From Rebecca billardiae RCC1528 (taxonomy: Eukaryota; Protista; Haptophyta), in contig OZ251222.1 in NCBI GenBank assembly GCA_965240325.2, positions 2,542,001 through 2,606,000 on the forward strand: a stretch of DNA of 64,000 nt, in the 5' to 3' direction. Below the pieces are notes generated by a model. That model ran no database searches. It was not told the DNA's origin and saw nothing but the letters and a program-made list of their open reading frames with translations. Shown here piece by piece: positions 4,436 through 56,249 of the stretch (positions are counted from its first letter, which is position 1; each line of letters opens with the position of its first letter). The position numbers and the translations under genes are program-made.

Positions 4436-5476
4436 CTAGCCACATGCGTGCGCATCGTGGAAGGTGAAGAGCGGGTCGAGTGTCGCGGTGGCGTCATAGT
4501 GCGCTACTGCGCGCGCGAGGAAGCGGTCGCCGTCGAGTGACTTTCCCTGGCCGCCCAGCTCGGCCGGCAGCGTCGCCGCGTCCAGCTCCTTGAGAAAGGT
4601 CTGGGCCTCCTCGCCCTCGCGCACCATCACGAACTTGTCGCGCGTGTCCTGCGGCACCCACATGGAGAAGATCTTGAACGCCGCCCAGAAGAGGAGGTTC
4701 GGCTTGTAGAACCACACGCGGCGCAGGCTCTCCGGGTAGAAGGTCGTGGCGATCCGCAGCGCCTCCTTGAGCACAGGCATGCCGTCAGGGCACGACTCGT
4801 GCTGCGGCAGGTGCGGGCCGACGCTCGGGCTGGGCGCGACGCGTCGCTTGATGGCGTCGCTGCAGTCTACGCAGCCGTCCGCGTCCCAGTACCGCGCGTG
4901 CTCGTGCGCCTTCATCTCGCCCGCCGGGTAAGCCGACAGGTCGAGGATGTATGACGCACCGCCGCGCGCCGCCTCGAGCACGGCGCGCTCGAGCACAAAG
5001 ATGGCCGCGCGGATGTGCGTGCTCGGGATCATGCGGTCCGCGGGCTTGAAGCCCGGGGCGCGCTCGTCGGACATCAGTGCGATGCGCCCGACGAGCACGG
5101 GCGAGCCCTGCCGATCGCGAAGCCCCATGTCGCCAAAGTACATGGCGGCGCCTGGGTTGGTCTGGTGGTGGAAGAGCAGCCGCGCCATCCCGCGCCGGTG
5201 GAAGTCGACGCAGCGGTAGGCGTGGCGGAACTGGAGGAAGTCGCGCAGGCGCGCCTCGGCCGTCTCGACCGGGGCGGATGACCTCTGGTTGCGCTCGGCT
5301 CGCAGGAAGCGGGCGACCAGCGCGTTGATTTGAGACGGCGCGAGCAGGGGGTCGAGCGCCGCCTCGGCGTATGTCGGCAAGAGCTTCTGAATGAATCGCC
5401 GGCGCAGCTCGTCCAGCTCGTGGTCAGAGTGCTCGTACTCGCTCGCCCGTGCCGGGCCGGGCGCGCCGGGTGCCAT
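4436..5476 (-). CDS. CRAL-TRIO (Sec14-like) lipid-binding protein
   Basis: Motifs RFLRA, DRQGSPVLV, YILDLS, FYPESLRRVWFYKP...FSMWVPQDTRDKFVM and LPAELGG. Confidence 0.85.
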   Translation of the reverse strand: MAPGAPGPARASEYEHSDHELDELRRRFIQKLLPTYAEAALDPLLAPSQINALVARFLRAERNQRSSAPVETAEARLRDFLQFRHAYRCVDFHRRGMARLLFHHQTNPGAAMYFGDMGLRDRQGSPVLVGRIALMSDERAPGFKPADRMIPSTHIRAAIFVLERAVLEAARGGASYILDLSAYPAGEMKAHEHARYWDADGCVDCSDAIKRRVAPSPSVGPHLPQHESCPDGMPVLKEALRIATTFYPESLRRVWFYKPNLLFWAAFKIFSMWVPQDTRDKFVMVREGEEAQTFLKELDAATLPAELGGQGKSLDGDRFLARAVAHYDATATLDPLFTFHDAHACG

Positions 5477-5745
5477 TGCCGCGCGCTGCGCCTCCTCCGC
5501 CCGCGGACGGGGCGTCCACGCTGAGGAAGGGGCGGAGGGATTCCTTATTGCTGACCCTCGGCAACTGTCATATTGGTGAGCGCTCCGGCACGAGTATCCG
5601 GAGCCATCGATCCCTTATCGGGATGACTGGGACTTGGGAGGCGGAGAAGGCGCCGATCGTGACGAACTCGGCGGTGGTCAGGAGCGCGCACCTCTAGCGC
5701 CCTCGCTGGGCGCTCGCCCGCTGCGCCGCTGCAGGCGGCACAGCC

Positions 5746-7473: not shown

Positions 7474-9261
7474 GACAGTGAGTGTGAATCATGTCCATAA
7501 CTATAACTATATATATAGCTGCCATTATTCATGAATTGACGGTGCGTCGTCGAGCTTCCGCTCGGCGATGCAGTGATGATGGGCGTCGGACTACTCGTCT
7601 ACTCGAGGCCGCGGGCCCGACTCGTCAGCATTGGCCGGGCCGCCGCGCCGCGGTCGGGGAGTGGATACAGACGGCTCAGGCGAGGAGCGCTGATCCTGCT
7701 TCCTGGTGTTTGTCTCTGCTGCTCGATATCTGCTGCTACAGCTTGCTGACTCTGACGCCTGCCCCGGCCCGTTGCATACCACGTCGCCGTTAATTAATAT
7801 ATATATAATTATAATAATTATAATTATAATAATATAATACCGATCGATCCGGATTTACTCGCGACTTCGAGTACAGTACTGACTCACAATCACATCATTA
7901 CACATGGCCTCATGCAGCAGCGCGCCGAATACTACCGCTAGACCTTAGCTTAATCATATCCGTGATGAGACTATATCCACCCCAGCGCGGCGTCCCGCCG
8001 TCCGTCCCGGCGGCTCCGCGGTCCTCGTACAGTATTGGCAGTGACGAATCCTGGCTGCTGGTCATTGCATTTGCGACTACTTCAGTACTTGTCGGTGCAT
8101 CAGCATCATCATCATCATCGGAGTCATCATCAGCCGAGGAGACCTGGATTGAGTGTGTGTCATATATATATGATGTATATTCAGTTATTTATGGTGCACT
8201 TAATGATGTCATAGCTGCACTGCGTATTACAGTTTACTCAGTCGTAGTTGATGCCGCAAATGAAACGAGCACTCAAGGCGCGGCCGAGGGCCACTTGATA
8301 TGAGCAATGAGCGCAACGCCACGCGCCGCTGTCGGGCCTGGGCGTCGCTAGTGACCGTAAGTGAGGCCCTAATCATCGCCGGCCATACCTACCAAGTACC
8401 ATGTGGCCGAGTAGCCCTCTGCTACGCCTCGATCACGACACGGCCTGTAAGCCACACCGTGAGCAACGCGGCAGCCAGGCCATCGGTTGCCGGTCGTCAT
8501 CACGCGCACTGTTCAAAATATGCGACGAGGGCAGCGCTACTGAGGACGCATCAGCCGCTCGACTCTTCTCTACCAGGGCGGTGCACCCCCCTTTCATTCC
8601 TTTGCACAATCTTTCCTGATTCCTTCCATGGACCCGCCTCTTTTTAAGCTCAGGCAGGCGAGATGGATTGTGCCAAGCTTTACGATCGCAGGTTGGGTGA
8701 GGGTGGTGGTTGGTTGGGGGCTGGCCAGGGTAGGGCTGGAGGCTTCGGCCGCCAGTCTGATCACCCGGAGCCCGTTATAAAGGGGAATTTAAAAGGTGCA
8801 GGCTATGCTCTGCCACCAACGCCGACTTAGTTGATTGAACCCCCTTGCGCCGACTTCGTGTCGACGATCGGGCACTGCCGCCGCCGACGAATCAGGAGAC
8901 CCGCGTCGTCCTACCTGTGTCGTTAAATCATAGAATGAGTACACATTATCGTAATATTCCTATCCACATCCAATAATGGGGGTACTGAAGGTAGCATGCA
9001 TTTATTACGTCGATGTGAGCAGTGCACACACGTCAATGAGTCAATCCATACCCCCGGATGATACCAGTATCATTGCCTTCCCTCGGTACCCCTCTTTTCA
9101 ATAATCATCTCATTCATTACCGAAGCATCACGGGATCAGGGTGCTAGCTCAGATATGATCTTACACGATGCGGGTGCGTAACACTGTACAATCGTTGCCC
9201 CTCCGCCTCCTCGGAGCCCTTCCGACAACCGCTCGTCCCTTGACGACAGCCTTCACCTCAC

Positions 9262-12200
9262 ATGCGCGCTGCGAAAGAGCGCCGGGGCGGCGGCCGCGTG
9301 CTCGCGGCGCTTATGCTCGTGAGTGCGTGCCGTGCGCACCTGGTTGTGCGCGATGGCCACGCGCAATTCGCCGGCCTCGAGCTCGTCGCCGGGCCGATGC
9401 GCTTCTCGCCCGCGCGCTTCAACGTCGTCGCGCCGATGCTCGTTGCGCGGCCGGGCGAGTGGGCGTACGACGCGTGCCCGCCTAGGTACATGGGCGCGCG
9501 CGACCTACGTGGCACGATCGTTGTGCACCTCAGCCCTGCCTTCGAGCGCTGCAGCTACGAGCAGCACGCGCGCGGCGCGGGCGCGCTTGGAGCGCTCGGC
9601 TGGGCCGCGTTCAGCTTCGACGCGACCGCCGGATTGGGGCGCGAGCCGGGCGGTATCCGATACTGGAGCCGCGCGACCGACACGCGCTTCCTGCCCGAGC
9701 CTCCCGCCTTCGACCTCAACCAGCGCGCCGCGCTGCCGCTGATGACGCACCTGCGCGACGGCAGCGGCTCGGTGCGCGTGAGCGTGCAGCCGTCGCACAC
9801 GCCGTGGGACGCGATGTGGGAGCACCCGCTTGCCACGGGCCTCGCCGCCGTGGTCGGCGTGCAGAGCGGGTGCAACGCGCTCTACGCCATTCTCGCCCTC
9901 GCCCGCGTCGTGCGCGACGTGGGCGGCCCCCGCATCGACGTGGCGCAGGCGGCCCTCGTGCTCGAGGCCGCGGCCAACGGTCTGCGCGTCGCCGCCCAGC
10001 TCAACCCGTTCCTCCGGCTGCGCTGGTACGACTACGAGACGGCGCTGAGGCTGCAACTCGCGCCGGAGGTGCTGAGCACGTGCGCGACCGCGCTACTGCT
10101 CATCTTCGTCGCGCAGGCCGCCGCCAACGGCGGCCTCGCCTCGCTGCGCGTGACGCGCCCCGCATACCAGCGCGCGCTGTGCGCGCTCGTGCTCGCGCTG
10201 AGCGGGCTGTCCGCCGCGGCCGAGGTGGCGCGCGCGCTGGGCGCGCGGCTGCTTTGCGCGAACTCGCTGGTGGTCGTGATGGTTGCCGGCGCGATCCTGC
10301 CCCTCGTCGTGGTGGCTTTCGCGCTTCACGCCGACCGCATGATCCGGCGCTCGCTCGCGGACGCGCCCGCGCTGCTCGTGCGCGCGCTGCTGTGGCGCGT
10401 GCGCACCTCGCTGCTGCTCTCGTGCCTCGCGGCTGGCGTGGGCGCCGCGTTCCCGATCGCGTACGTGCGGCCGTGGGCGTGCGTTGGCGCCTTCACCGCG
10501 TACACCGGGCTCTCCAACGCCACCTCGTACTTCCAGATCAGCGCCGTCGTCGGCTCCACGTCCCGCTTCAGCCCGCTGGCCAAGGCGGCGCGCGCGCTCG
10601 GCTCGCTCTGCTCCCCGCGGCTGCGGCGGCTGCTCCGGCCCGCACGAGGCCCGACCTCTCGCGCCGGAGGGTGCGGCGCGGGAGCAAGCTCGGCGCGCGT
10701 CGGGCCAGACGTCCCCCTGGGCGGCGCCACGGGGCACTCTGAGCCCGCCCGCACCCCGCGCTTGTTGAGCCGGACGGCGTCGGGGCGGGCGCGCTTCCCT
10801 GGGGGCGCACTGCGCGTGCAGACGACCGACGCGGCGCTCGGCGCGGGCGACGAGCTGTCGCCGCGCAACGATGAGGGGCATTTGCTCCTGGGCGTTCGGC
10901 TGCGCCATCTCGAGGCGTGGTCTGTCGAGCATGGCGTCACGCCTGACACGACCACCGCCGAGGTTGGTCGCATGGTCGCCGCGCTCACGCGTGAGAGCGG
11001 CCAGTCGCTCGCCGAGGCGCACGCACACCTGCGGCTGCCGGACGGCACCGCCGCGGTGGGCGAGGCCAACCTCTTCGTCAGCCACGCGCAGGCGTGCTCG
11101 TTCCGCCAGCTGCTCAGCGCGGTGCGGCTGCACGCCGCGCTCTGCAACCTCGACGAGCGCTCGCTGTTCCTCTGGCTCGACCTCGCGACCATCCGGCAGC
11201 AGGACGTGCAGGCCGGCATCCGGCACATCGGCGATGTGATCTCGAGGATCGGTAGCATGGTGCTCGTGCTCGACCCGTGGCACTCGGCCGTCTCGCTCGG
11301 ACGGATGTGGTGCCTGTACGAGGTGGTGCAGTGCCGGCTGCACCCGCACGTCGAGCTACAGCTCGCGCTGCCGCCGTCTGAGCTGGGCGACTTCCTCGCC
11401 GCGCTCGACAACGACGCGTCGCGCGTGCTCGAGACGCTCTCGTCCTTCGACTGCCGCACGGCCGCCGCGAGCGTCGCCGACGACTGGCAGCGGATCCACG
11501 AGCTGATCGTCGCCACGTTCGCACCGCCGAGCGAGCGCCCCAGCTCGTCGGTGGGCCGGCGCCGCCTCGACGCCGTGTCCAGCGCGGTCGCAGACGTGCT
11601 GCATCAAGGCAGCTTCCGTGCGTCCGTACCCCCGACGAGCCCTGACGGTGCCGCGCTCGACGAGTTCAACTCCGAGGTGCACAAGGCGCTGCTGCGCGCG
11701 CTCTCGCTCGCAAGCTGGCGCGGCGTCGGGCCGGCGCGCTCGTCGAGGCGGAGCACGCACTCGAGCTCGAAGAATGGGCGACTTTCCATCTCGCCCTCTG
11801 GGTCACGCTCGAGCTCGCCCTCCCCCGCCTCGACTCGCAAATTCCACCCGCTCGGCCTGCGCTCCAACCCCGGCACACCCGCCATCCTACGGCGGCAGCC
11901 GCCGGACGACGCGGGGACGCTGCCGCGCGCCGACGCGAGCCCGCTCGGGTGGGCGCAGCGCGCGATGTCGGCACCGCACGCGTGGGCCGGCGGCAGCGGC
12001 GAGGGCATGGGCGCCTGCACAGCCAGGCCGGGACCACTGGGCGCGGAGCGCTTGCGCTCGATGTCATTGCCTGCGGCGAGCGTCGCCGGCCGTGTGTCGG
12101 CCTTGCCCCTCGCCGCGGAGCCCAGGCGCGGCCAAACGGGCTTTGCCGATGGTTCCGAAGCGCGCTCTGGCGGGCACTGCGAGATGCAGCACGACCTCGG

Positions 12201-12396
12201 GGTGCTGCAGGCAGCCATGGGACGCTCGCCACAGCGCTCTCTCGTCGGCGGCGGGGTGCGCGCACAAAGTCGACCGCAAGGCGGCGTCCCCATCGCCGCT
12301 GTCGCCGGCCGCTCGGACAGCGGCTCCCTCCCCCGCTCCGGAGCACAAGCCGCCTCGCCTATCACGCGCGCTCCGGCGGAGCGTGGCGACCGATGA
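9262..12396 (+). CDS. Signal peptide + PA domain + 6-7 TM bundle + cytosolic TIR/HET-like domain
   Basis: PA-like motif C...DLRGTIVV...RCSYEQHARGAGALGA, then serial hydrophobic helices, then LFVSHAQ / FLWLD / VLVLDPW / RMWCLYEV motifs (~10890-11700). Confidence 0.75.
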   Translation: MRAAKERRGGGRVLAALMLVSACRAHLVVRDGHAQFAGLELVAGPMRFSPARFNVVAPMLVARPGEWAYDACPPRYMGARDLRGTIVVHLSPAFERCSYEQHARGAGALGALGWAAFSFDATAGLGREPGGIRYWSRATDTRFLPEPPAFDLNQRAALPLMTHLRDGSGSVRVSVQPSHTPWDAMWEHPLATGLAAVVGVQSGCNALYAILALARVVRDVGGPRIDVAQAALVLEAAANGLRVAAQLNPFLRLRWYDYETALRLQLAPEVLSTCATALLLIFVAQAAANGGLASLRVTRPAYQRALCALVLALSGLSAAAEVARALGARLLCANSLVVVMVAGAILPLVVVAFALHADRMIRRSLADAPALLVRALLWRVRTSLLLSCLAAGVGAAFPIAYVRPWACVGAFTAYTGLSNATSYFQISAVVGSTSRFSPLAKAARALGSLCSPRLRRLLRPARGPTSRAGGCGAGASSARVGPDVPLGGATGHSEPARTPRLLSRTASGRARFPGGALRVQTTDAALGAGDELSPRNDEGHLLLGVRLRHLEAWSVEHGVTPDTTTAEVGRMVAALTRESGQSLAEAHAHLRLPDGTAAVGEANLFVSHAQACSFRQLLSAVRLHAALCNLDERSLFLWLDLATIRQQDVQAGIRHIGDVISRIGSMVLVLDPWHSAVSLGRMWCLYEVVQCRLHPHVELQLALPPSELGDFLAALDNDASRVLETLSSFDCRTAAASVADDWQRIHELIVATFAPPSERPSSSVGRRRLDAVSSAVADVLHQGSFRASVPPTSPDGAALDEFNSEVHKALLRALSLASWRGVGPARSSRRSTHSSSKNGRLSISPSGSRSSSPSPASTRKFHPLGLRSNPGTPAILRRQPPDDAGTLPRADASPLGWAQRAMSAPHAWAGGSGEGMGACTARPGPLGAERLRSMSLPAASVAGRVSALPLAAEPRRGQTGFADGSEARSGGHCEMQHDLGVLQAAMGRSPQRSLVGGGVRAQSRPQGGVPIAAVAGRSDSGSLPRSGAQAASPITRAPAERGDR

Positions 12397-13280
12397 TGCG
12401 GGCGTTGGCGCCGAGGGGCATCACGCCTAGCGCCTTGCGAGCGCGGCCCCCTCCGCCGCCGACCACGCAGTCAACCCGATCTCTCTCTGAGTGAGACTCT
12501 CTCTCTCTCTGAGCCGCGTCTGCTACTATGATTTTTTATTCAGTAGACCTACTCAAACACTGAGTCTCAGAGTGACAGCCTCAGATTAGATCGAGTAGCT
12601 AAGTCTCGTCCGCCAAAGACTGGCTGTACTAGTATTGATTGAAGTAATGGACGTGCGCCTCCGAATAGCTACTGCTCGTCACTAGTAGCTAACTGAGCCA
12701 TCATAGGACCAGGTCATAAGTACTACAGTACTACATACATCAGCAGCTTAGAACTACTCATCCATCGCGCACAAATATTAACAATTAATCATATAGCAGA
12801 TAGATACATAGTTGTCTTAGCCAGTAGGCGCGCGCCGCGGGCAGTACAGTAGCACCGCGCTGATGACGCGCCGTTATTCCACCGCCACGGGGCGCCAGCG
12901 GCCAGGCCGCGCGGCGGCTGAGGCACGCCGTTTTGCGCGGCGGCGCGCCTCGATCATCATCAGCAAATATCTGCTCATCATATCAAAAACGTTCGGCCGC
13001 CCGGGCCAATCTGTAATCCGATCGAGTCGTCGTGATACTATGCCGTAGTCCCGAGGCCGAGTCCGTCTCACTACGCCACGGGTCATCATGGATTCATGCG
13101 CGCCATTCCGGCGCCTCATCAATCATCATTGGCGCAAGCTAGTTAGCTACGGTCTGGCGCCTACGGAGCCCTACGGATCTGCCGTGATCGGACAGCACCG
13201 GGATGAAGCGTCGTCATCAAGCGGCGGACTGGCTGAGGCGCGTCGCCGACCGCAGCCGCAGCGGCAGTCTTACAGGCTTC

Positions 13281-20144: not shown

Positions 20145-20988
20145 GCGTCTGCCCTCCAAGGCGCAGCTCGGGCCGTGTGGGACGCTCTGATGGGCGGAAC
20201 CACTCGCGCGCTCGAGCAGATCGCCGACCGAAGCCCACGGGTAACTCATCATCAGTACTATCTACCGCTACTGCCAGCGCCCAGCGGCATGCTACCGGCG
20301 GCGCTGGCTGCCAGGCCAGCCCGGCGGCCGGCCGGCATATGAATAATTATGATGATGACGACGACGACGCGGCCGGCGCCCGCGGTCATTACGTGAAGGC
20401 GGACGACGTGAAGCCAGGTGACGACGCGACACTGATCGGTTCGTTCATGATGAGGATACATGCAGCTTGATGAGTCGGACACTGCTGATTCTGATGCGTA
20501 ACAGCCGTCAGAGCATGGAGCGACGAGGAGGCGTGTGCAGGCGGTTGCGACTCGCGCCGCTGATATGTCGGCATGCAGTCCAGATGTCAGCTGCCGGCTG
20601 GACCGACGTGTCCGCGCCTTCGGCGCATGGACCACGGTCAGCGTATGGTCCCCTGCACCTCCTTTCGAAGGGGTTGCAGTGCCGCGCCATACAGCCAGCA
20701 GCCGTCCACCTCGACGCAGGCGAGGCCCCCACCCGCGTCAGCTCTCCGTGCCCAGCGCTGGCGACACGGCGCGCTGAGGGTGCAAGGTTGCATGCGATGG
20801 TCATTCGTGCGTCCACAGAAGAGAAGCCGGCTCAAGCCAGCGGAAGGTACATGTGCGCCCCTCGAGCGAGAGGCGCAGCGCAAGGCTGGGGCGGAAGCGC
20901 ACCGCCGCCGCCAGCGCCGACGCGCGCGCGCGTGCGCCGCGTCGCGCAGCCGTGCCGTGCGCGCCCCCCTGCGCACGGCCCAGGCCGC

Positions 20989-22709
20989 CTAGGCATCCGG
21001 GTCGTACGCGAGGTAGGGGCCCAGCCACTTCTCGACCTGCGGCACCGTCATCTTCTTGCGCGCGGCGTAGTCGACGATCTGGTCCTTGCAGACGCGGCCG
21101 ACCTGCGCGCGCGGGCGGTAGCGCGAGGCGGCGACGGCGGCGGGGCGTGAGCGCGCTGTGGCTGGCGCGCGCGCGCGCGCCCGCCCGCCCGCCCGCGAGG
21201 CGGCGCCGCCGTGTGTTGCCACCACGCGCGCCGCCACCACGCGCCGCCACCGCCGCGCGCGCGCGTGCGCGCGCGCTCACCTGGAAGTACTGCGAGCACG
21301 GGTTGGCGAAGACGAGCGCGCTGACCGACGCGGCGGGCAACATGGCGTGCGAGTCGGTGAGGGTGATACCCGTCTCCTTCTCCGCGTTGAGCAGCTTCCA
21401 CATCGTCGGCTTCTCGGTGTGGTCGGGCTGCGTCGGGTAGCCGGGCGCCGGCCTGATGCCCTGGTACTTGAGCTTGAGCATGTCGTCGGGGCTCATCGAC
21501 TCGTCGGGCGCGTAGCCCCACAGCTCCTGCGAGGGCGGGGCGGCGGGCACAGGGGCGCGGCGCCGGTGAGCGCGAGGCGCGCCTCGAGCGCGCCGCGCGC
21601 ACGCGCGAGCGCGCCGCGCCGCGCCGCGCCGCGCCGCGCCGCGCCGCGCCGCGCGGCTCACCTTGCGCATCTTGGCGTGCAGCAGCTCGGCGAAGGCCTC
21701 GGCGAAGCGGTCGGCGATGGCCTCGGTCATGATCACGTTGTAGTCGTTGCTCTCCTTCTTGTACTTCTCGCACAGCGCCTCCGAGCCGAAGCCGCACGTG
21801 ACGGCGAACGCGCCGACGTAGTCCTTGACCCCGCTCCCCTTGGGCGCGATGAAGTCGGACATGGCCAGGTAGTGCTCGTCCTCGCGCTCCTCCTGCTGGC
21901 GCAGCGTGTAGAAGGTGCCCGCGACGGAGGCGCGCGACTCGTCGGCGTACACCTCGATGTCGTCGCCCACCGAGTTCGCCGGGAAGATGCCCACGACCGC
22001 GCGCGCCTCGAGCAGCTTGTTGTCGATGAAGTGCTGCATCAGGTCGAGCGCGTCCTTGTGCAACTTCTTCGCCTCCGAGCCGACCGCCTCGTCGTTGAAG
22101 ATCTTGGGGTAGCCGCGGTTGGGGTACTTGCCGCGGAGCTGCCACACGGAGAAGAACGGGTTCCAGTCGATGTACGGCACGAGCTCCGCCAGCGGGAAGT
22201 TGACGTACGCCTTGGTGCCCACCAGCTTGGGCGTGGGCGGCGGGCTCAGCTTCCAGTCCGGCGTGAGCGCCTTTGCGCGCGCCTTCTCAAGCGTGAGGAA
22301 CTTGCGCTCGTTGAGCGACGCGTAGTGCTCCTCGCGCATCTCGTCGTACTGCTCGCGCACGTCCGAGATGTACTCCTCGCGCTGCTTGTCGTCGAGCAGC
22401 GAGGCGACCACGCCGACCGCGCGGCTCGCGTCGAGCACGTGGCAGCTGAAGCCCGTGAACTTGGGCGCGATCTTGACGGCGGTGTGCATCTTGGACGTGG
22501 TCGCGCCGCCGATGAGCAGCGGCACGCGGATGCCGCGCCGCTCCATCTCCTGCGCGACGAAGACCATCTCGTCGAGCGAGGGCGTGATCAGCCCGGAGAG
22601 CCCGAGCACGTCCGCCTTCGACTCGATCACCGCGTCGAGGATCTTGTCGCACGAGCACATCACGCCGATGTCCACGACCTTGTAGTTGTTGCAGCCGAGC
22701 ACGACGCCG

Positions 22710-22741
<32 letters not shown>

Positions 22742-25526
22742 CTTCACCGTCGCCATCACGATGGTGCCCTTGGGCTTGTCGTCCTCGGCGGGCAGCCCCG
22801 CGGCCGCGCGCGCCGCCCTCACCTCCTCCTTCTCCTTCTCGAGGTACGGGATCAGGTACGCGACGGCCTTCTTCATCACGCGCGCCGACTTGATCACCTG
22901 CGGCAGGAACATCTTGCCCGCGCCAAACAGGTCGCCTACCTCGTTCATGCCGTCCATCAGCGGGCCCTCGATCACCTGCAGCGGCGACTTGATCGCCTGC
23001 CGCGCCTCCTCCGTGTCCTCGTCGACGAACTCGGAGATCCCCTTGATCAGCGAGTACGTCAGCCGCTCGCGCACCGGCTTCTCGCGCCACTCGAGCTTGT
23101 TCACCTTTGCGACGGTCGCGCCGCCCGCCGCCTTGCGCTCCTTCTCCTCCTCGGCAAACTTGAGCAGCCGCTCGACGTGCTGGCCGTCCGCCGAGTTGTT
23201 GAGCACGACCTCCTCGACGTACTGCCGCATCGGCTCGGGGATGTCCGAGTAGATCGGCATCGCGCCCGCGTTGACGATCCCCATGTCCATCCCGTTCTTG
23301 ATCGCGTGGTACAGGAAGACGGCGTGGATCGCCTCGCGCAGGTCGGTCAGCCCGCGGAAGCCGAACGAGAGGTTGGACACGCCGCCCGAGATCTTGGCGC
23401 CGGGGAGGTTCTCCTTGATCCACTTGCACGCCTCGATGAAATCCTTGCCGTAGTTGTTGTGCTCCTCCAGCCCCGTCGCGATCGTCAGGATGTTCGGGTC
23501 GAAGATGATGTCCTCCTTGGGGAAGTTGACGCGCGGCGAGACGAGGATGTCGTACGCGCGCTTGCAGATGCGGATCTTCTCCTCGTACCCGGCGGCCTGG
23601 CCCTCCTCGTCGAAGGCCATCACGACGACGGCGGCGCCGTAGCGCTTGACGATCTTCGCCTTCTTGACGAAGTCCTCCTCGCCCTCCTTCAGCGAGATCG
23701 AGTTGGCGATGCACTTGCCCTGGCAGCACTTGAGGCCGGCCTCGAGGATGTGGAACTTGGACGAGTCGACCATCATCGGCAGCCGCGAGATGTCCGGCTC
23801 GGGGATCGCCATGTTGAGGAACTTCTGCATGGCCTTGACGCCGTCGAGCATGCCGTCGTCCATGTTCACGTCGAGCACCTGCGCGCCCGACTCCGCCTGG
23901 TGCTTCGCGATGTCGAGCGCCTTGTCGTAATCATTGTTCATGATGAGCTTCTTGAACTTGATCGAGCCGGCGAGGTTGCACCGCTCGCCCAGGTTGACGA
24001 AGCCGAGCGTGGGCAGGTCGACGGTGCACGCCTCGAGGCCGGAGATCTTCATCTTGGGGTTGGGGTTGGGCTTCGGCTTCTCGCGCGGCTTGATGCTCGC
24101 CACCTCCTTCGCCAGCGCCGCGATGTGGTCCGGCGTCGTGCCGCAGCAGCCGCCGAGCATGTTGACAAGCCCGAGGTCGGCAAACTGGCGCACCTCCTTG
24201 GCAAACTCGGCCGGCCCCTGGTCGTACCCGCCCATGGCGTTGGGCAGGCCCGCGTTGGGGTACGAGTGGACGTGGCAGATGTCCGCGCAGTTCGAGAGCG
24301 CCTGCATGAACGGCAGCATCTGCGTCGCGCCGAGCGCGCAGTTGAGGCCGATGCACACCGGCTTGGCGTGCATCACCGAGACGAAGAAGGCCTCGGTCGT
24401 CTGGCCCGAGAGCGTGCGGCCCGACAGGTCGACGATCGTGCCCGAGATGATGACGGGCAGGGGCGAGTAGCTCGGGTTCTCGTCGAAGAACTCGTCGATC
24501 GCGAACAGCGCCGCCTTCGCGTTGAGCGTGTCGAAGATCGTCTCGACGAGCAGCAGGTGCACGCCGCCGTCGCACAGCGCCTTGGTCTGCTCCTTGTACG
24601 CCGTCACGACCTCGTCCCACGTGCAGTTGCGGAAGCCGGGGTCCTCGACGGAGGGCGAGATGGAGAGCGTGCGGTTGGTCGGGCCGATCGCGCCCGCCAC
24701 CAGCCGCGGCTTCGACGGCTCCTTCGCCGTCACCTCCGCCGCCGCCTCGACCGCGAGCTGCGCCGAGCGCAGGTTGATCTCGTACACGAGATCCTCCATG
24801 CCGTAGTCGGCCTGCGCGATGGTGGTGCCCGAGAAGGTGTTGGTCTCGCAGATGTCCGCGCCCGCCTCGAAGTAGCGCTTGTGGATGTCGCGGATCGTGT
24901 CCGGCTGCGTGAGCACGAGCATGTCGTTGTTCCCCTTGATGTCGCGGTGGTAGTCCTTGAAGCGGTCGCCGCGGAAGTCGGCCTCCGAGAACTTGTACTG
25001 CTGGATGGTGGTGCCCATCGCGCCGTCGATGATCATGATGCGCTTGGACATCGTCTCGTCGATGTACTTGTGCACCACCGCGCCGTCCACCGGGGCTGCG
25101 CGACGGGCGCGCGGCGGCGTCCGCGGTGCGCGGGAACAACACGGTGCACAGCCAGTCAGGCCGAGTCCGCGAGGGCCTCTCGCGCGCGGCGCGCCGAGAA
25201 GCTCCAATCTGGCGCGGCCCCGGGCAGGCGCTCGCGCGAGGTGCAAGTGGGGGCGTCGCGCGCCGCGCGCTGCAAGCACCTCCCCACGGCAGAGACGCGC
25301 CCGCCGAGCCGCCAGACGGCGCGGAGGATGCCTTGGGCGCGGCCGACGGCGCCGGGGCGCCGCCCGCCTTGGCCGCCTTGGCGGTCTTCGCCTTCGCGAG
25401 CGACTCCTCGAGCTTGGCAATAGTTGCCGTCAGCTCATCTGCTGACATGCCATCGAAGCTCGCCGCGGTCTGCTTCTGGATCTCCGCCTGCACGGCGGCA
25501 GCGATTGCCTTCGCGTCCACCGACAT
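20989..25526 (-). CDS. metH: Cobalamin-dependent methionine synthase; introns 21103-21280, 21527-21661, 25096-25279
   Basis: [21 protein letters not shown]12-binding DVHDIG and SAM-activation GIRPAPGYP motifs. All three GT-AG introns splice in frame. Confidence 0.97.
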
Positions 25527-35905: not shown

Positions 35906-36150
35906 GATCGGCGCTCTGGCCGCACACCGCCTCCGCGTGCATGCGCGGTCCACGGGGTGAACGACCGAGCGGCCGTGAAGTCACGGTTCGCGGTCGCCGG
36001 CCCAGTGGCCCACCGCGCCAAGGCGCCAAGCCGCCGCGAGAGGGCGCGCAGTTCACCGCCAGTGCACCCGGGCGTCAAGTCGCGCCGCCAGCGCGCGAGC
36101 CGCGGCGGCTGAGTACCAGCGCCGCGCGAGCTCACGCGCAGACCGTGCGC

Positions 36151-38673
36151 ATGGCGCGCATCAAGAAGCCGCGACGTGCCGACAAGAAGCCCGCGCATGT
36201 GCGGCCACCCGCACCGCCCGCCGCATCAGTGCAGCCCCCACCGTCGGCCGCGCGCGTGCCACCGGGCTCAGCGGCGCCGAGCAGCGCGCGCAACGACCAC
36301 AACGACGACGACATGGACTGGGAGGACGAGGTCGAGGTGGACCCGGCAGGCTCCGAGCGGGGCAACGGAAGCACCGCTGCCGCGGACGCCGCCACGCCCA
36401 CCGCCACCGGCGCGCAGCCCGGCGTGATCACGGTGTGCGTGCCGCGCGCGCCGGAGGGTGCACACGAGGTGATCGATCTCGAGGCTGAGCCCGAGGTGGA
36501 CGCGCCTCGGCGCAAGCGGCGGCGGCAGCCGACGCGCGATGAGGCGTACGTGGCGACCGAGCTGCACCGCACGCACCTCCTCGCGCTCCTCGCGCACGCC
36601 CGCGCCTGCTCGCGCGCGTGCGACGGCTTGGAGCTGCGCGCGCGGCTTCTCTCCCTGCTCCCAGAGGCGGAGGCGCCGCCCGTGGTGCGGACGGAGGGCG
36701 CGTGGCGCGACGAGGCGGAGGGTGCGCTCCCGTCGGTGCGCCACCTCGAGCGCCTCGTGCGCTGGCTGCGCTCCGCCTTCGCAGAGGAGCGCGCCGCTCG
36801 CTCGTGTCCGCCCGCCGCCGCGTGGGCGGCGGCCGCGGGCGAGGGCACGGAAGGCGGCGGCGCGACGGCGGCGCTTCTCGAGAGGGCCCTCGAGGCGCGC
36901 GTGGCGCCCGCGGCGCTGATGCACCAGCTGCTCGTCGCGCTGGTGCGCGCCCTCGGTGCGGGCGCGCGCTGGGTGCAGCCCTTGCGCCCGCTCACGCCCA
37001 AGGCGGCGACGCGGCTGCTCGCCGCGCGCGCTGACGACGGCGGCGGCGGCGGCGCGGCCGGCGACGCGGGCCGCGAGCTCGGATCGGGCGCGCTCCCGGA
37101 CGCGCAGGGCTGGGCGGAGATCGCGGTGGCCACGGGGGCCGCGGGCGCGAGCGACGCGCCCCCGTTCCGCTGGGTGCACGTCGACGCCGCGCGCAACGCG
37201 CTCGACCACCCGGCGGTCTACCACACACCAGGAGCGGCGGGCGCGGCCGCGGCCGGCCGCGGCGGCGCGGCCGGCGGCGGCGGCGGCGGCGGCGGCGCGA
37301 TGGAGCGCTTCGCCTTCGTGTGCGCGTTCACGCCGCGGTGCGCGACGGACGTGACGGTGCGGTACGTGCGGCAGTGGGCGGACGTGCCGCGCATGCGCTC
37401 CCCCGACGACGGCTGGTGGCCGCGCGCGCTCGACGCCGCCTCCGCTTGCCGCGCGGCGCGCGAGGTGGCCGAGGCAGCTGACAGCGCCGAGTTCGCTCGG
37501 CGCCGCGCCGCGCAGCCGCTGCCGAGCACGCTGGCCGCGCTGCGCGAGAGCGGCGAGTTCGTGCTCGCGCGCGACCTGGAGAAGGCCAAGACGCGCGCCG
37601 CGCGCCCCGACGCGCGGGCGCACGAGCTGCTCGTCCGCGGCAGGCCGGAGCGCGTCTTCCGCAAGAAGGACGTGGCTGAGCTCAAGTCTGCAGAAGGGTG
37701 GTACAGGCATGGGCGGCAGGTGAGGCGGGAGGAGGTGGGCGCGGCGGTGAGCGCGGGCGCGGAGGAGGGCGAGGCGGAGGAGGAGCCGCCGCACCAGCTC
37801 GGCGCGCCGCCGCCGCTGCCGCCGCTCGCGCCGCCGGCCGAGTCCGCCGGCGGCGCCGGCGGCTGTGCGGGCGGTGCCGACGGCGGCGGCGGCGGCGGCG
37901 GCGGCGGCGATGGCGGCGGCGGCGGCGACGGCGGCGGCGGCGGCTTGGGTTTGGCTGCTGGCGGCGCGGCCACCGCTGGCGCCGCCATGCGCGGCACCGG
38001 CGGCCGTCTCGGGCCGGGAGACAGCGCGTGGTACCTGTGCGGCGGCCTGCCCTCGGCGGCCGGCGGCGTTGCCGCCGGCGCGCGGCTCGGCGCGACCAAG
38101 CCCTCCGCCGCCGCGCGCCGCGCCGCACGGCCGCTGTATGGCCAGTGGCAGACGGAGCCGCTGCGCGTGCCGAGCGCGAGCGGCGGCGCGGTGCCTCGCA
38201 ACCGGTACGGCGTGGTGGACGTGCTCACGCCGGCGCACCTGCCCGAGGGCACGGTGCACGTGCGCCTGCCGCGCGCGGCGCAGGTCGCGAGGGCGCTCGG
38301 CATCGACTACGCACCGGCCAAGGTCGGATTCGAATGGCACGGCGGCAGCGCGACGCCTCGGTTCGAGGGCGTGGTGGTGTGCGCCGAGCACGCCGAGACG
38401 GTGGCTGACGCGCACGCGGCGCTGACGCACGCGACGCTCGAGGGCGAGCGCGCCAAGGTGGAGCAGGAGGCGGCGCAGCACTGGCGCGCGCTGCTCCGCG
38501 CGCTGTCGATTCACCTGCAGCTGCGGCGCGACTACGGCGACGGCGCGGGCGGGGCCACGCCCGCGGCACCGCGCGCGGACGCGGGCCGAGGCGACGCGCC
38601 GCCTGAGATGGCGCGCGCCTCGAGCTCAGCGGCGCTCGCGCTCGCGCTTGGGGGCGAGGAGGAGCAGCTGTGA
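36151..38673 (+). CDS. XPC: DNA repair protein XPC/Rad4
   Basis: LHRTHLLALL, WAEI, RWVHVD and DVTVRY, plus beta-hairpin domain motifs LYGQWQTE, VPRNRYGVVDV and LGIDYAPAKVGFEW...PRFEGVVV. Confidence 0.92.
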   Translation: MARIKKPRRADKKPAHVRPPAPPAASVQPPPSAARVPPGSAAPSSARNDHNDDDMDWEDEVEVDPAGSERGNGSTAAADAATPTATGAQPGVITVCVPRAPEGAHEVIDLEAEPEVDAPRRKRRRQPTRDEAYVATELHRTHLLALLAHARACSRACDGLELRARLLSLLPEAEAPPVVRTEGAWRDEAEGALPSVRHLERLVRWLRSAFAEERAARSCPPAAAWAAAAGEGTEGGGATAALLERALEARVAPAALMHQLLVALVRALGAGARWVQPLRPLTPKAATRLLAARADDGGGGGAAGDAGRELGSGALPDAQGWAEIAVATGAAGASDAPPFRWVHVDAARNALDHPAVYHTPGAAGAAAAGRGGAAGGGGGGGGAMERFAFVCAFTPRCATDVTVRYVRQWADVPRMRSPDDGWWPRALDAASACRAAREVAEAADSAEFARRRAAQPLPSTLAALRESGEFVLARDLEKAKTRAARPDARAHELLVRGRPERVFRKKDVAELKSAEGWYRHGRQVRREEVGAAVSAGAEEGEAEEEPPHQLGAPPPLPPLAPPAESAGGAGGCAGGADGGGGGGGGGDGGGGGDGGGGGLGLAAGGAATAGAAMRGTGGRLGPGDSAWYLCGGLPSAAGGVAAGARLGATKPSAAARRAARPLYGQWQTEPLRVPSASGGAVPRNRYGVVDVLTPAHLPEGTVHVRLPRAAQVARALGIDYAPAKVGFEWHGGSATPRFEGVVVCAEHAETVADAHAALTHATLEGERAKVEQEAAQHWRALLRALSIHLQLRRDYGDGAGGATPAAPRADAGRGDAPPEMARASSSAALALALGGEEEQL

Positions 38674-53300: not shown

Positions 53301-56249
53301 TCAGATCGGATCTCCTGGCATCCTCTTGGCGAGGTCGCCAGGCGCGCCGCGCCGCCACGCTTTGCGCAGCGCGAGCTTGCAGTCGCTCATTTCCTTCAGG
53401 CGCTTCGTCCTCTCAGCTCGGCTCCACTCCGGAAAGTCCACGTACGAAGCATACTCGTCCAAGTTGCCGCGGAGGTCGAGCACGGACAGCGAGCGAGACG
53501 AACCGCTCTCGCGCAGCAGGTCGACAAACGCAGTCGCGTCCGTGATCCGGTTGTTGCTCAGGTTGAGCGCGGTCACGTGGGGCGCTTTGCGCAGCGCCTC
53601 TGCGATGACCCTCGCGGCATAGCTGTCGAATCGGTTCCAGCTGAGGTCGAGCGAAGTCAGCGAGGGGTTGGCGCAGATGTCGAACGCGACGAGCACGGCT
53701 TCCGGGCTGGTCAGCCCGCTCGTCTCCTGCTCGAGCTGCGGCCGCCGACCCTGGATCTGACGAGCGGGAATCCGTTGGCCGGCACCGAAGCTGAGCGAGG
53801 CGGTGCGCGCGCCCGCCTTGAGGCCGCACAGGGTGCGCACACCGGCAGCCCGCGCGGCGTCCACGAGCTTCTCCTCCGTGCCGGGGCGGATGCAGTTGTT
53901 CAGGATGAGGCCGAGGGCCTGCACCCGAGGCCCGCCCTCCCTCGAGCGCAGCCAGTCAGCGAGGGCGAGCACCCCGGCGTCCATGATGAGGTTGGAGCTC
54001 AGCTCGAGCGCGCTCAGGGCGGAGTTGGAGCGCAGCGCGCCTGCGAGCTGCACCGCGACCTCGTCGCCGAGGCAGTTGTCGGCGAGCTCGAGCGTGCTGA
54101 GCGAGCTGTTCGCCGAGAGAGCAGCCATGATCCGGGGCCCCAGGCTGATGGTCGGTCCTCCCGGCTGCCAACCCGAAGAAGGCCAGGCGGCGATGCTCTG
54201 GCTCAGGTTGAGCGTGGTCAGCGCGCTGGTGGCGCCCAGCAGCGCCTCGATGAGCGGCGGCAGGTCTCGGTGCGCGATGGCGCCCCCCAGGTTGAGCTCA
54301 CGCAGGGGCGGGTTGTCGGGCAGCGCGTGAGCAAGCCTCTCCAGCCCCGAGTCCTCCCAGTTGCCCGACAGGTCCAGCGACGTGAGGGCCTCGTTGGCGC
54401 GCAGCGCCCGTCCAAACGCGTCCCCGATCGCACTGTTGCCGCCGCTGCCGCCCAGCTCGGCGCGGTACCACGGACCCGCCACCTTGAATCTGCCGAGCGT
54501 CGCCAGAGGGCCCCGGCACAGCCGCGCCGTCGAGAGCGTCTTGCACGCGCCGATGGCCTCGGCGAGCGCAATCAGGCCGGCGGAGCCGAGCTTGTGGCAG
54601 CTCAGGTCGAGCGCGGTGAGCGTCGTGCTCGCGGCGATGCCCGCGCCGAGCTCGGCCAGCACAAAGCTGTCGCTCACGCCGCAGTGCGCGAGCGTGAGCG
54701 AGGTCAGGGAGTGCTCGGCTGAGACGAGCCTCACGGGCGGGAGGGGGCGGTCGCACCCGAGGATCGTCAGCTTCTCCAGGTGCACGGCCGTGGGCGCGCC
54801 GAGCGCGGCAACGAGCTCCTCGGCGACCTCCTGCGTGTGGATACGCGGCAGCTCGAGCGCGCGCGCACGGCTGCGTGCGAGCGCGCGGATCGTCTTGAGC
54901 GCGCGCGCGCTCAGCGTCGCCTTGCGGGCGCCGCCCTTGGTGTCCGCCTGGGCGCGCGCCAGCTGCGCGTCGTAGTGCGGCAGAAGCACCGACGCAAAGC
55001 GCGCGCGCAGCGTCGCGTCGAACGCCTCCTTGTCCTCGCCCACGAACGCGAGGATGCGCAGCTTGTCAGCGCCCACGCTCGCCTGCGCGCTCTCGACGGA
55101 GAAGTCGGCCGCGCGCTCGGCGACCGCGAGCGGGAAGTCCTTGGACACGGCTTCGAGGGAGTCGCCGTCGCGCACGCCGCGCACCTCGATCGCGCTCTCC
55201 TTCTCGAAGCCGCGCCCGCGCTCGTTGCCCTCCTTGGTGCCCGCGCTCACGGCGTACGTGTCCAGCTTGAACGCCTGGCCGCGTGGGTTGAGCAGCGCGC
55301 GGTACAGCTCAAAGCCGCACCACGCGCGCGTGAACGTGACGCCCTTGCGGTCGAGCACGGAGACGACGCCCTCGGCCAGCTCGAGCGCCTTGAAGAAGGG
55401 GTACTCCGCGATGGAGGCGTCGTGCTGCAGCTCCGACGCCAGATCGTGCTGGTTGATCGCGTGGCTGCGCGCGCAGGCGGCGTGGGCGTCCGCTGCCCTG
55501 ACTGTCTGTGCGTGCGCCGAGCGCCGACCGGCGTGCGCGCGTGCGAGTGAGGGGCCGCGCGCGGCGAGCACTTACGCGCACACCCAGTACGTCGCCTCGT
55601 GGGGCGCCATGCCGCGGTCTGCCGCGTGCGCGCGCAGCATCGCCAGGAAGTCCTCGATCGGCTCGCCCCACCTGCGAGGAGGCGCGTGCGGTGGCGCACG
55701 CGACGGCGGGAGGGGGTGGGTGGGTGGACGACACGCACGAGCATTGCGCGGCACAGATTCGCGCCCGCAGCGTGCACACGCGCACCAGTGGCTGACGAAC
55801 CATCGCGGCCGCTGTGGTCCCGTCGCGAGCACCTCCACCATGGAGCAGCGACGCTCGCGCGTCAGCGGCTTGATCAACCAAAACATGAGGTCGTACAACG
55901 TTATCGTGTGCTCGGTCAGCTTCTCGCTCGACCGACCCTTGTCCGTCGACGTCCACCCTTTCTTCTTGCAGTTCATCTTAGCCGCGAGGAACACGCGCTC
56001 CAGCTGCGCGAGCGTGATGCCCCGCTCCTCCGTCTGCGGGATCGCGCAACCCGGATGCGTCATCCCGTCGGGGTAGAGCGCACTCGTGATGAGGTTGTGC
56101 CCGTAGTTGACCAGCATGGCCTCGGCGCCCGATGGCTGCGGCGGCTGCTTCGGATTGGCTGCCTGAGGTGTGGCGCGCGGGGCCGTCGGGCCTGCCGTCG
56201 TCGCCTTCTTCTTTGTCGCGGTCGTCGCCTTGGTCGGCGGACCCATCAT
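53301..56249 (-). CDS. TIR/HET-like domain + ribonuclease-inhibitor-type LRR protein; introns 55465-55575 and 55672-55785
   Basis: Spliced N-terminal domain RGITL...WFVSHWWGEP...YWVCAHAINQH...FTRAWCGFEL, followed by repeated LTxLDLSxNx LRRs of ~28 aa. Confidence 0.85.

What the first reader, a model, noticed from the sequence alone, without database searches (positions are those of the whole stretch)
9262..12396. Candidate new receptor class: PA ectodomain + GPCR-like TM bundle + cytosolic TIR/HET-like enzyme domain
Seen: one uninterrupted ORF with a signal peptide, a PA-like module, 6-7 TM helices, and then FVSH / WLD / LVL / RMWCLYE motifs. Known: FxSH...WxD...WCxxE is the TIR/HET-fold signature, and its Glu (codon 11320-11322) is catalytic in NAD+-cleaving TIRs of plant NLRs, SARM1 and bacterial Thoeris. 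PA domains bind cargo or ligands. Inference: a surface sensor coupled directly to a nucleotide-cleaving output, a functional analogue of a Toll-like receptor built from different parts. I do not know of this architecture being described in algae.
Basis: partly seen in the sequence, partly recalled or inferred. Interest (0 to 1): 0.8.

Follow-up and report, generated by a model that had tools for sequence, protein, structure and literature searches.

The report
PA-7TM receptor with TIR/HET-like tail
This pavlovophyte alga gene encodes one membrane protein with an outside PA binding domain, a GPCR-shaped seven-helix core and an inside TIR/HET-like domain that keeps the catalytic glutamate. None of the papers I searched describes this receptor design, and its function is untested.

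Summary
ORF 9262-12396 (+, 1044 aa) is a real single-exon gene: third-codon-position GC of about 0.9 switches on at 9262 and off near 12400.

The protein has these parts:
- a signal peptide;
- a PA-like ectodomain;
- a roughly 90-aa disordered linker;
- a roughly 250-aa domain;
- a roughly 250-aa low-complexity tail.

Glu687 (codon 11320-11322), in the motif W-C-L-x-E, is invariant in 65 aligned relatives and present in 117 of the 120 domain copies that cover it.

At least 33 database representatives share the whole architecture. The domain alone has 1531 relatives, many of them fused to TPR arrays.

NAD+ cleavage, the ligand, the cellular location and any immune role are inferred. No RNA run was listed.

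The scan had already found and followed up two paralogues of this architecture elsewhere in this genome. Multi-pass membrane proteins with canonical TIR domains have been reported in another haptophyte.

The parts
9262..9336 (+). Signal peptide (aa 1-25), ending ...LMLVSACRA
   Evidence: Hydrophobic peak at aa 11-29. Relatives start the same way, with a hydrophobic leader followed by L.V..GP (and the A2 consensus). No dedicated signal-peptide predictor was run.
9337..9816 (+). PA-like ectodomain (aa 26-185) with two family-conserved Cys, C72 and C97
   Evidence: - AF2 gives an alpha/beta domain at aa 27-175 with pLDDT above 90.
- Foldseek matches include the transferrin-receptor apical domain, the ZNRF3 ectodomain and the 2ek8 aminopeptidase; the isolated PA domains (ZNRF3 4c9u, redesigned TfR apical domain 6y76) reach target-normalised TM 0.60, against 0.16-0.24 for the whole receptor and aminopeptidase chains.
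- The family profile hits the PA region of 2ek8 at E 0.027.
- Pfam PA hits 7 of 28 relatives.
- C72 is kept in 25 of 28 relatives and C97 in 27 of 28.
9826..10551 (+). Seven-helix membrane bundle (aa 189-430) with a GPCR fold
   Evidence: - AF2 helices: 189-220, 227-246, 258-288, 300-325, 334-364, 370-400, 404-430.
- Foldseek matches FFA2 and FFAR1 at target-normalised TM about 0.6.
- No Pfam 7TM family hits.
- Lys+Arg counts favour N-terminus out, C-terminus in.
10573..10608 (+). Short amphipathic helix after TM7 (aa 438-449), in the helix-8 position
   Evidence: AF2 helix 438-449; sequence PLAKAARALGSL.
10609..10875 (+). Linker rich in Arg, Gly, Ala and Pro (aa 450-538), probably disordered
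   Evidence: Composition. It is not conserved in relatives; the conserved blocks are aa 11-455 and 535-755.
10876..11058 (+). Conserved helical N-terminal extension of the output domain (aa 539-599): LLLGV...TT.EV...V..LT
   Evidence: Part of the family consensus. AF2 pLDDT is about 98. ESM Atlas structural neighbours cover model residues 4-270 at TM 0.77-0.80.
11059..11634 (+). TIR/HET-like alpha/beta core (aa 600-791) with FVSH (11074-11085), WLD (11173-11181) and WCLYE (11308-11322)
- Foldseek's top rows are plant TIRs at E about 0.09.
- The top BFVD row is a Tetraselmis virus TIR/WD40 protein.
- The family profile hits PdTIR (3h16) at E 0.014.
11320..11322 (+). Glu687, the putative catalytic residue
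   Evidence: Invariant in 65 of 65 aligned relatives. Present in 117 of the 120 domain copies that cover the position. It lies in the first turns of the helix after the third strand (model helix 153-164), and a Trp sits four residues before it.
11635..12396 (+). Low-complexity C-terminal tail rich in Ala, Ser, Gly, Arg and Pro (aa 792-1044), plus the stop codon
   Evidence: Composition. GC3 stays at 0.8-0.9 up to about 12260. A short helix-like stretch at aa 793-820 is shared with the Diacronema lutheri paralogue. The tail was not part of the big search.

Best explanation
The gene encodes a multi-pass receptor-type protein of a conserved algal/protist family.

**Topology.** The signal peptide and PA domain face outward (or into a lumen). 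A GPCR-fold seven-helix bundle spans the membrane. A flexible linker carries a cytosol-facing domain of the TIR/HET superfamily.

**Most likely mechanism.**
1. A ligand, or clustering at the PA/7TM part, changes the spacing or self-association of the cytosolic domains.
2. This switches on an N-glycosidase activity that depends on Glu687. NAD+ cleavage is the most likely reaction.
3. The result is either a nucleotide-derived signal or NAD+ depletion and cell death. Defence against viruses or other biotic stress is a plausible context.

**Shown here:** the gene is real, the three folds are present, the topology is predicted, the catalytic-type motif is conserved, and the fusion is conserved across relatives.

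**Inferred:** the enzyme activity, its substrate, its activation by the receptor part, the cellular location and the biological role.

**Confidence.** About 0.9 for the architecture. About 0.5 for the whole statement including the enzymatic output.
For: **The gene is real**
- Codon periodicity is confined to 9262-12400.

**The fusion is conserved**
- 29 of the top 150 representatives carry both halves.
- Four more long PA-7TM proteins carry weaker or degenerate copies of the domain.
- No long PA-7TM relative lacks the domain.
- 15 of 16 receptor-linked domains fall in one clade with SH-aLRT 99, apart from the TPR-linked ones.

**The folds**
- Both AF2 models are confident: pLDDT 89.9 and pTM 0.87 for the domain, pLDDT 88.8 and pTM 0.85 for the N-terminal part.
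- PA fold.

**The catalytic-type motif**
- F605, S607, H608, W638, D640, P672, W673, R681, W683 and C684 are nearly invariant. E687 is invariant.
- The W-C-L-x-E spacing resembles what I recall of plant TIRs (WCxxE) and SARM1 (WxxxE). That part rests on my own knowledge, not on a tool result.
- HET is reported to share the functionally important Glu with TIR (PMC9153377).
- In a newly found TIR-like family, a conserved Glu predicted NADase activity (preprint 10.64898/2026.09.21.753143).

**Topology**
- The inner loops plus the tail hold 10 Lys/Arg in loops and more at helix ends. The outer loops hold 4.
Against: - This protein hits no Pfam TIR or HET model at E<10.
- There is no residue-level superposition of Glu687 on a TIR catalytic Glu.
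- No RNA run was listed, so expression and a single transcript are not shown directly.
- This paralogue departs from its family at three conserved positions. It has L207 where 26 of 28 relatives have a Glu in TM1, A676 where 62 of 65 have Pro, and A642 where 44 of 65 have Phe.
- Some relatives have lost the Trp and Glu, so the family tolerates non-catalytic members.
- The biochemical activity of HET domains is not determined (PMC12881547).
- A GPCR fold does not prove ligand sensing.
Confidence: 0.5

Rival explanations
1. The TIR/HET-like domain is a non-enzymatic assembly module. After receptor clustering it recruits partner proteins with the same domain (the TPR- or LRR-linked relatives) by homotypic interaction, as the TIR domains of animal Toll-like receptors recruit adaptors.
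For: - The same domain occurs in many soluble proteins that could be partners. There are 1531 relatives, and TPR-linked examples were confirmed.
- An LRR-linked copy lies in this same window.
- Some receptor relatives have lost the Trp and Glu but keep the domain.
- Adaptor TIRs also appear among the structural matches.
Against: - Glu is kept in 117 of 120 copies, and Trp, Cys, Arg, Ser and His are nearly invariant. That pattern is typical of an active site rather than an interface.
- Enzymatic TIRs rank above adaptor TIRs in the structural search.
Confidence: 0.2
2. The domain is an enzyme but does not cleave NAD+. It could be a nucleotide or nucleoside N-glycosidase or transferase of the deoxyribosyltransferase/DNPH1/MilB type, or it could act on nucleic acids to make 2',3'-cNMP, as reported for some plant TIRs.
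- The nearly invariant Cys next to the Glu motif recalls the Cys that matters for the 2',3'-cNMP synthetase activity of plant TIRs (PMC9153377).
Against: TIR chains outrank deoxyribosyltransferases throughout the lists. The FxSH and W.D motifs align with a bacterial TIR.
Confidence: 0.15
3. The protein is an endomembrane (Golgi, vacuole or lysosome) sorting or nutrient-sensing protein, not a cell-surface sensor. The PA domain would bind luminal cargo or ligand, as in vacuolar sorting receptors and PA-TM-RING proteins.
Against: Nothing tested here separates plasma membrane from endomembrane. Either way the output domain would face the cytosol, so this rival changes the location more than the mechanism.
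Confidence: 0.12
4. The ORF is not a functional gene, or it is a chance GC-driven ORF or a decaying paralogue.
For: The genome is very GC-rich and long antisense ORFs overlap the region. This copy has lost three family-conserved residues. No RNA run was listed.
Against: - The frame-specific GC3 signal ends exactly at the ORF ends.
- There is 29-46% identity to many relatives over both halves.
- All catalytic-type residues are intact.
- AF2 models both halves with confidence.
Confidence: 0.03

Closest known systems
TIR domains with NADase activity (SARM1; plant TNL TIRs such as RPP1, RUN1 and RPS4; bacterial ThsB and PdTIR-like)
   Same: - Flavodoxin-like alpha/beta fold; these are the best structural matches.
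- FxSH in the first strand and W.D in the second align with PdTIR.
- Invariant Glu with a Trp four residues upstream, in the helix after the third strand.
   Different: - No significant Pfam TIR hit.
- The domain is about 250 aa, with a conserved roughly 60-aa helical N-terminal extension and extra C-terminal helices.
- It is attached to a 7TM bundle, not to an NB-ARC, SAM/ARM or single-pass LRR receptor.
- Activity is untested.
Fungal HET domain (PF06985), a TIR-related cell-death domain
   Same: - Similar size: HET is about 220-240 aa (PMC12881547).
- A similar three-block pattern: aromatic-x-S-H/Y, W-x-D...Q, R-x-W-x-x-E.
- Five of 65 relatives hit the HET model, best E 3e-4.
- Soluble relatives pair it with TPR_10/TPR_12 arrays, as fungal HET-NLRs do.
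   Different: - This protein and 60 of 65 relatives do not hit PF06985.
- There is no NACHT or NB-ARC between the domain and the repeats in the relatives examined.
- The family is found in haptophytes, green algae, diatoms, oomycetes and a chytrid.
GPCR-bigrams of protists: GPCR-PIPK (RpkA), GPCR-INPP, GPCR-AC, GPCR-PDE, GPCR-TKL (PMC5784254)
   Same: An N-terminal GPCR-fold 7TM is fused to a C-terminal catalytic-type cytosolic domain. This implies receptor output without, or besides, G proteins. GPCR-PIPKs are reported in haptophytes.
   Different: None of the six described types has a TIR or HET-like output or a PA ectodomain; the word TIR does not occur in that paper. The 7TM here matches no Pfam GPCR family.
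Membrane TIR proteins of Gephyrocapsa huxleyi (PMC12489294) and animal Toll-like/IL-1 receptors
   Same: An outside sensing region, membrane span(s) and a cytosolic TIR-type domain with a conserved Glu. The G. huxleyi set includes proteins with several TM helices before the TIR.
   Different: Those proteins were defined by canonical Pfam TIR models, which this family does not hit. The paper text mentions no PA domain or GPCR fold. Its table of architectures was not available to me.
TeTIR/DUF4062 extended TIR-like NADases (preprints 10.64898/2026.09.21.753143 and 10.64898/2026.05.01.722283)
   Same: A precedent for a divergent, extended TIR-like family that standard TIR models miss, where a conserved Glu correctly predicted NADase activity.
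   Different: It is a different family: no DUF4062 hit appeared among the families listed for the relatives. It is coupled to NACHT ATPases, not to a membrane receptor.

Membership tests
TIR superfamily (fold level) | Flavodoxin-like parallel beta-sheet with alternating helices (bA-aA-bB-aB-bC-aC-bD-aD-bE-aE) | tested here: met
   - The AF2 model has the strand-helix order 75-78 / 85-98 / 107-109 / 111-134 / 136-140 / 153-164 / 169-173 / 176-197 / ~206 / 210-224.
- The scores are middling on the tool's own scale.
TIR superfamily (fold level) | Catalytic Glu at the start of helix C, preceded by an aromatic residue (WxxxE) | tested here: inconclusive
   W683 and E687 lie in model helix 153-164, after strand 136-140. 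E is 65/65 and W 64/65. The equivalence is inferred from the motif and element order; no residue-level superposition was possible with these tools.
Pfam TIR, TIR_2, ThsB_TIR (sequence families) | Significant match to the family HMM | tested here: not met
   No hit at E<10 for this protein. Among 65 relatives, TIR_2 hits 2 (best E 0.18) and ThsB_TIR hits 1 (E 0.23). The profile against PDB finds PdTIR at E 0.014, over the first half only.
TIR NADases | Glu-dependent NAD+ cleavage | not testable with these tools
   Needs a biochemical assay.
HET domain (PF06985) | Significant match to PF06985 | tested here: not met
   No hit for this protein. Five of 65 relatives hit, best E 3e-4. None of 120 domain-only relatives carries a precomputed PF06985 label.
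HET domain (PF06985) | Expression of the domain alone induces cell death | not testable with these tools
   Needs expression of aa 539-800 in a host cell.
GPCR fold (7TM receptors) | Seven TM helices with the N-terminus out and C-terminus in, in the GPCR helix arrangement | tested here: met
GPCR sequence families (Pfam 7tm_1/2/3, Frizzled, Dicty_CAR and others) | Match to a family HMM or its signature motifs | tested here: not met
   No Pfam 7TM family hits this protein or its 27 relatives. G-protein coupling cannot be tested here.
PA domain (PF02225) | Match to PF02225 and the PA/apical-domain fold | tested here: met
   - This protein has no direct hit.
- Seven of 28 relatives hit, best E 1.2e-5. 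P0061 scores 26.5 bits, above the 23.9 cutoff.
- The family profile hits the PA region of 2ek8 at E 0.027.
- Foldseek matches the ZNRF3 ectodomain and a redesigned TfR apical domain at target-normalised TM 0.60, and the 2ek8 aminopeptidase at 0.24.
GPCR-bigrams (PMC5784254) | A GPCR domain plus a catalytic accessory domain in one protein | tested here: inconclusive
   The architecture fits. Whether the accessory domain is catalytic is untested, and this type is not among the six described.

The most novel reading that the evidence does not exclude
PA-7TM-TIR/HET-like proteins are a seventh type of GPCR-bigram, one that has not been described. In this reading a GPCR-fold surface receptor directly controls a Glu-dependent NAD+-cleaving (or related nucleotide-cleaving) domain. 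Its output domain belongs to a large TIR/HET-superfamily branch that has no Pfam model and is spread across protists (more than 1500 representatives). Algae, oomycetes and chytrids attach that domain to 7TM, TPR or LRR sensors without any NTPase. Together these would form a distinct innate-immunity or cell-death toolkit.
Probability: 0.35. Interest if true: 0.8.

Novelty: new variant of a known kind. Interest (0 to 1): 0.6.

Why it matters
TIR-type domains are the shared enzymatic core of immune and cell-death signalling in bacteria, plants and animals. How protists use them is largely unknown.

Here a GPCR-fold receptor is wired directly to such a domain. That gives a simple, testable model of how an alga might turn an outside cue, such as a virus, grazer or bacterial signal, into NAD+-derived signalling or cell death.

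The gene also points to a large domain family without a Pfam model. Standard TIR and HET searches miss it, so surveys of algal immunity genes that rely on Pfam TIR models probably undercount these proteins.

It would add a new output type to the GPCR-fusion receptors of protists.

Tried and rejected
- **Pfam and PDB sequence searches with the single protein** found nothing useful.
- **The word-index homologue search failed twice.** It returned nothing for the single protein (region 560-800) and nothing for the N-terminal alignment. The exhaustive HMMER search found 1531 relatives. Blanks from the word index are therefore meaningless for these Ala/Arg-rich proteins.
- **A trimmed core profile against PDB** did not extend the TIR alignment to the Glu motif. 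It added only spurious protein A repeats.
- **RNA evidence:** no run was listed for 8800-12800.
- **Taxonomy of the full-architecture relatives.** Two contig look-ups gave only anonymous Logan runs. Cluster look-ups named only Diacronema lutheri.
- **Supplementary tables of PMC12489294** are not held. I could not check whether its multi-TM TIR proteins resemble this one.
- **Chance ORF rejected.** The GC3 periodicity rules it out. The overlapping antisense ORFs (for example 10329-11603 on the minus strand) are by-products of the GC-rich coding strand.
- **SPPL2-type PA-protease and PA-TM-RING relationships rejected.** There are no matching Pfam hits, there are seven helices rather than nine or one, and all top fold matches are GPCRs.
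- **Genomic neighbours** are ordinary housekeeping genes and give no functional hint.
Full report
**1. The observation**

The window has an uninterrupted ORF at 9262-12396 on the + strand, 1044 aa with an ATG start. The genome is very GC-rich (0.55-0.79 per 2 kb), and long ORFs also occur on the opposite strand, so ORF length alone proves little.

Codon-position composition settles the matter. In this frame, third positions are 0.84-1.00 GC and second positions 0.38-0.82, from 9262 to about 12260. The 1.8 kb upstream and the sequence downstream of about 12400 are near 0.5 GC with no periodicity. This is a single-exon coding region whose ends coincide with the ORF ends.

Codon 11320-11322 is Glu687.

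**2. Relatives**

The single protein hits no Pfam family at E<10 and nothing meaningful in PDB sequences. The word-index search found nothing.

The exhaustive HMMER search with aa 1-830 found 1531 representatives at E<1e-3, with 225 below 1e-10.
- Of the 150 listed, 46 share the N-terminal half and 133 share the C-terminal domain.
- 29 have both halves in the same order, at 579-1073 aa.
- With the family profile, the four remaining long 'N-terminal only' proteins also carry the domain. In them it is weaker, truncated or degenerate: P0061 has ..DCLYQ.. where the family has WCLxE.
- So every long PA-7TM relative seen carries this domain.
- One relative cluster contains Diacronema lutheri KAG8458467.1, annotated 'hypothetical protein'. 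It has the same architecture at 36-40% identity.

**3. N-terminal half**

An alignment of 28 relatives (A2) gave an AF2 model with pLDDT 88.8 and pTM 0.85. It shows a leader helix, an alpha/beta domain at aa 27-175, seven long helices between aa 189 and 430, and a short helix at 438-449.

*PA domain:*
- Foldseek matches the alpha/beta domain to PA/apical domains: transferrin receptor, ZNRF3, the aminopeptidase 2ek8 and a subtilisin-like protease. The isolated PA domains (ZNRF3 ectodomain, redesigned TfR apical domain) reach a target-normalised TM of 0.60.
- The family profile hits the PA region of 2ek8 at E 0.027.
- Seven of 28 relatives hit Pfam PA, best E 1.2e-5. P0061 scores above the curated cutoff.
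- Two Cys (C72, C97) are conserved in the ectodomain, as expected for an extracytosolic domain.

*7TM bundle:*
- This is above the tool's caution level for helical bundles.
- No Pfam GPCR family matches, so this is a fold assignment, not family membership.
- The loops and tail that would be cytosolic with the N-terminus outside hold 10 Lys/Arg, plus six more at the adjoining ends of TM5 and TM6. The outer loops hold 4.
- With a signal peptide and seven helices, the C-terminal domain is predicted to face the cytosol.
- This paralogue has Leu207 where 26 of 28 relatives have a Glu in TM1. E235 and R242 in TM2 are kept.

**4. C-terminal domain**

An alignment of 65 relatives (A1) gave this consensus:

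...LGVS...TT..V....V.P.T...ATxFVSHAW...W.D.F...QH...IG.VVLVL.PW..P..L.R.WCL.E...

Glu687 is the only invariant column. F605, S607, H608, W638, D640, P672, W673, R681, W683 and C684 are at 90% or more. Across all domain copies in the 150 proteins, 117 of the 120 that cover the position have Glu.

The AF2 model is confident, with pLDDT 89.9 and pTM 0.87.

Four independent lines place it in the TIR/HET superfamily:
- **Profile against PDB sequences.** The best hit is the Paracoccus TIR protein 3h16 at E 0.014. It aligns FVSHAW with FISHAW and W.D.F with VWYDDF.
- **Pfam scan of the 65 members.** HET hits 5 (best E 3e-4), TIR_2 hits 2 and ThsB_TIR hits 1. All are weak.
- **Foldseek.** Plant TIRs fill most of the top rows at E about 0.09. 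The top viral hit is a TIR/WD40 protein of Tetraselmis virus 1, E 8e-3.

The scores are middling by the tool's own standard. The argument rests on agreement between methods and on the uniform identity of the top rows.

Enzymatic TIRs rank above adaptor TIRs.

In the model, Glu687 sits in the helix that follows the third strand, with Trp683 four residues before it. In TIR NADases this is the position of the catalytic Glu. I inferred this from element order and motif. I could not produce a residue-level superposition.

The domain is larger than a TIR. A conserved helical extension of about 60 aa precedes the core, and extra helices follow it. ESM Atlas neighbours reproduce the whole unit at TM 0.77-0.80.

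**5. The domain family elsewhere**

- No Pfam model covers it. 120 domain-only relatives carry no Pfam label other than TPR.
- It is named only as 'hypothetical protein' or, through its TPR partner, 'kinesin light chain' in a chytrid.
- Atlas clusters containing it come from haptophytes, green algae, diatoms and oomycetes. Partners include TPR_10/TPR_12 arrays, a methyltransferase and DUF285 repeats.
- Five long relatives checked by Pfam are domain-plus-TPR proteins with one to three copies of the domain and no NTPase.
- In this same window, the gene at 53301-56249 (-) carries a divergent copy, seen as four collinear profile hits, followed by LRR_6 repeats.
- A quick maximum-likelihood tree of 94 domains splits them, at SH-aLRT 99, into a clade of 36 and a clade of 58. 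The clade of 36 holds 15 of the 16 receptor-linked copies, plus short proteins of which at least P0029, P0019 and P0033 look like N-terminally cut receptors. The clade of 58 is mostly TPR-linked.
- The fusion is therefore an old, diversified subfamily and not a gene-model artefact. The tree is a short search without bootstrap and has several long branches.

**6. Mechanism**

*Shown here:*
- one gene;
- three folded modules in a fixed order;
- a predicted cytosolic orientation of the output domain;
- an active-site-like set of invariant residues.

*Inferred.* The PA/7TM part senses something outside or in a lumen. The roughly 90-aa linker lets the cytosolic domains associate. Association switches on Glu687-dependent cleavage of NAD+ or a related nucleotide. 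The result is a signal or NAD+ loss and cell death.

*Precedents:*
- TIR NADases need self-association to form the active site (PMC9153377).
- HET domains kill cells when overexpressed, but their biochemistry is undetermined (PMC12881547).
- In the TeTIR family a conserved Glu correctly predicted NADase activity (10.64898/2026.09.21.753143).

The rivals are an adaptor role, another substrate, and an endomembrane location. They are listed with their tests in the rival explanations.

**7. What is known**

- GPCR-fold receptors fused to catalytic domains are established in protists, including haptophytes: PIPK, INPP, AC, PDE, TKL and AP types (PMC5784254). None has a TIR-type output.
- In Gephyrocapsa huxleyi, virus-responsive proteins with an extracellular region or several TM helices followed by a canonical TIR with the conserved Glu have been described and proposed as receptors (PMC12489294).
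- My searches found no paper on a PA-7TM-TIR/HET-like protein or on this domain family.
- Within this scan, two paralogues of the same architecture on other DNA of this genome were already noted and followed up, with the same reading (s1-341024 and s1-357890).
- I therefore rate this as a new variant of known kinds (receptor-TIR fusions, GPCR-bigrams), not a categorically new system.

**8. Limits**

- No RNA run was listed.
- The taxa of most full-architecture relatives are unknown.
- No experiment supports activity, ligand or location.
- The C-terminal tail (aa 792-1044) is low-complexity and was not searched.

Noticed in passing
window 53301-56249 (-), domain pieces at 54960-55910: A second, divergent copy of the same TIR/HET-like domain. 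It shows as four collinear hits of profile A1, interrupted by an in-frame stop or intron near 55571, and is followed by RNI-type LRR_6 repeats (Pfam 6e-22). There is no NTPase between them. Another first-stage note already covers it.
   Followed up: partly
relatives P0061 and P0070: Some PA-7TM family members keep the output domain but have lost the Trp/Glu of the WCLxE motif (for example DCLYQ). This suggests catalytically dead receptor paralogues.
   Followed up: partly
window 9880-9882 (Leu207), 11185-11187 (Ala642), 11287-11289 (Ala676): This paralogue differs from its family at three strongly conserved positions. TM1 has Leu where 26/28 have Glu. Position 676 has Ala where 62/65 have Pro. 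Position 642 has Ala where 44/65 have Phe. The meaning is unknown.
   Followed up: no
window 11638-11721 (aa 793-820): A short helix-like stretch after the domain (..FNSEVHKALLRALSLASW..) is shared with the Diacronema lutheri paralogue KAG8458467.1 (BLASTP E 3e-4). Its function is unknown.
   Followed up: no
window 20804-25429 (-): An uninterrupted 1542-aa stop-to-stop reading frame holding a complete cobalamin-dependent methionine synthase (MetH). All five Pfam domains are present.
   Followed up: no
window 35908-38670 (+) and 4439-5614 (-): A Rad4/XPC-type DNA repair protein (BHD_3, 6e-24) and a CRAL/TRIO lipid-binding domain protein. These are ordinary neighbours.
   Followed up: no
window 10329-11603 (-) and other antisense ORFs: Long antisense ORFs with high GC3 overlap the gene. 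They mirror the GC-rich coding strand and are not genes.
   Followed up: partly
tool behaviour: The word-index protein search returned no relatives for this family although exhaustive HMMER found 1531. Blanks from it should not be read as absence for these Ala/Arg-rich proteins.
   Followed up: yes
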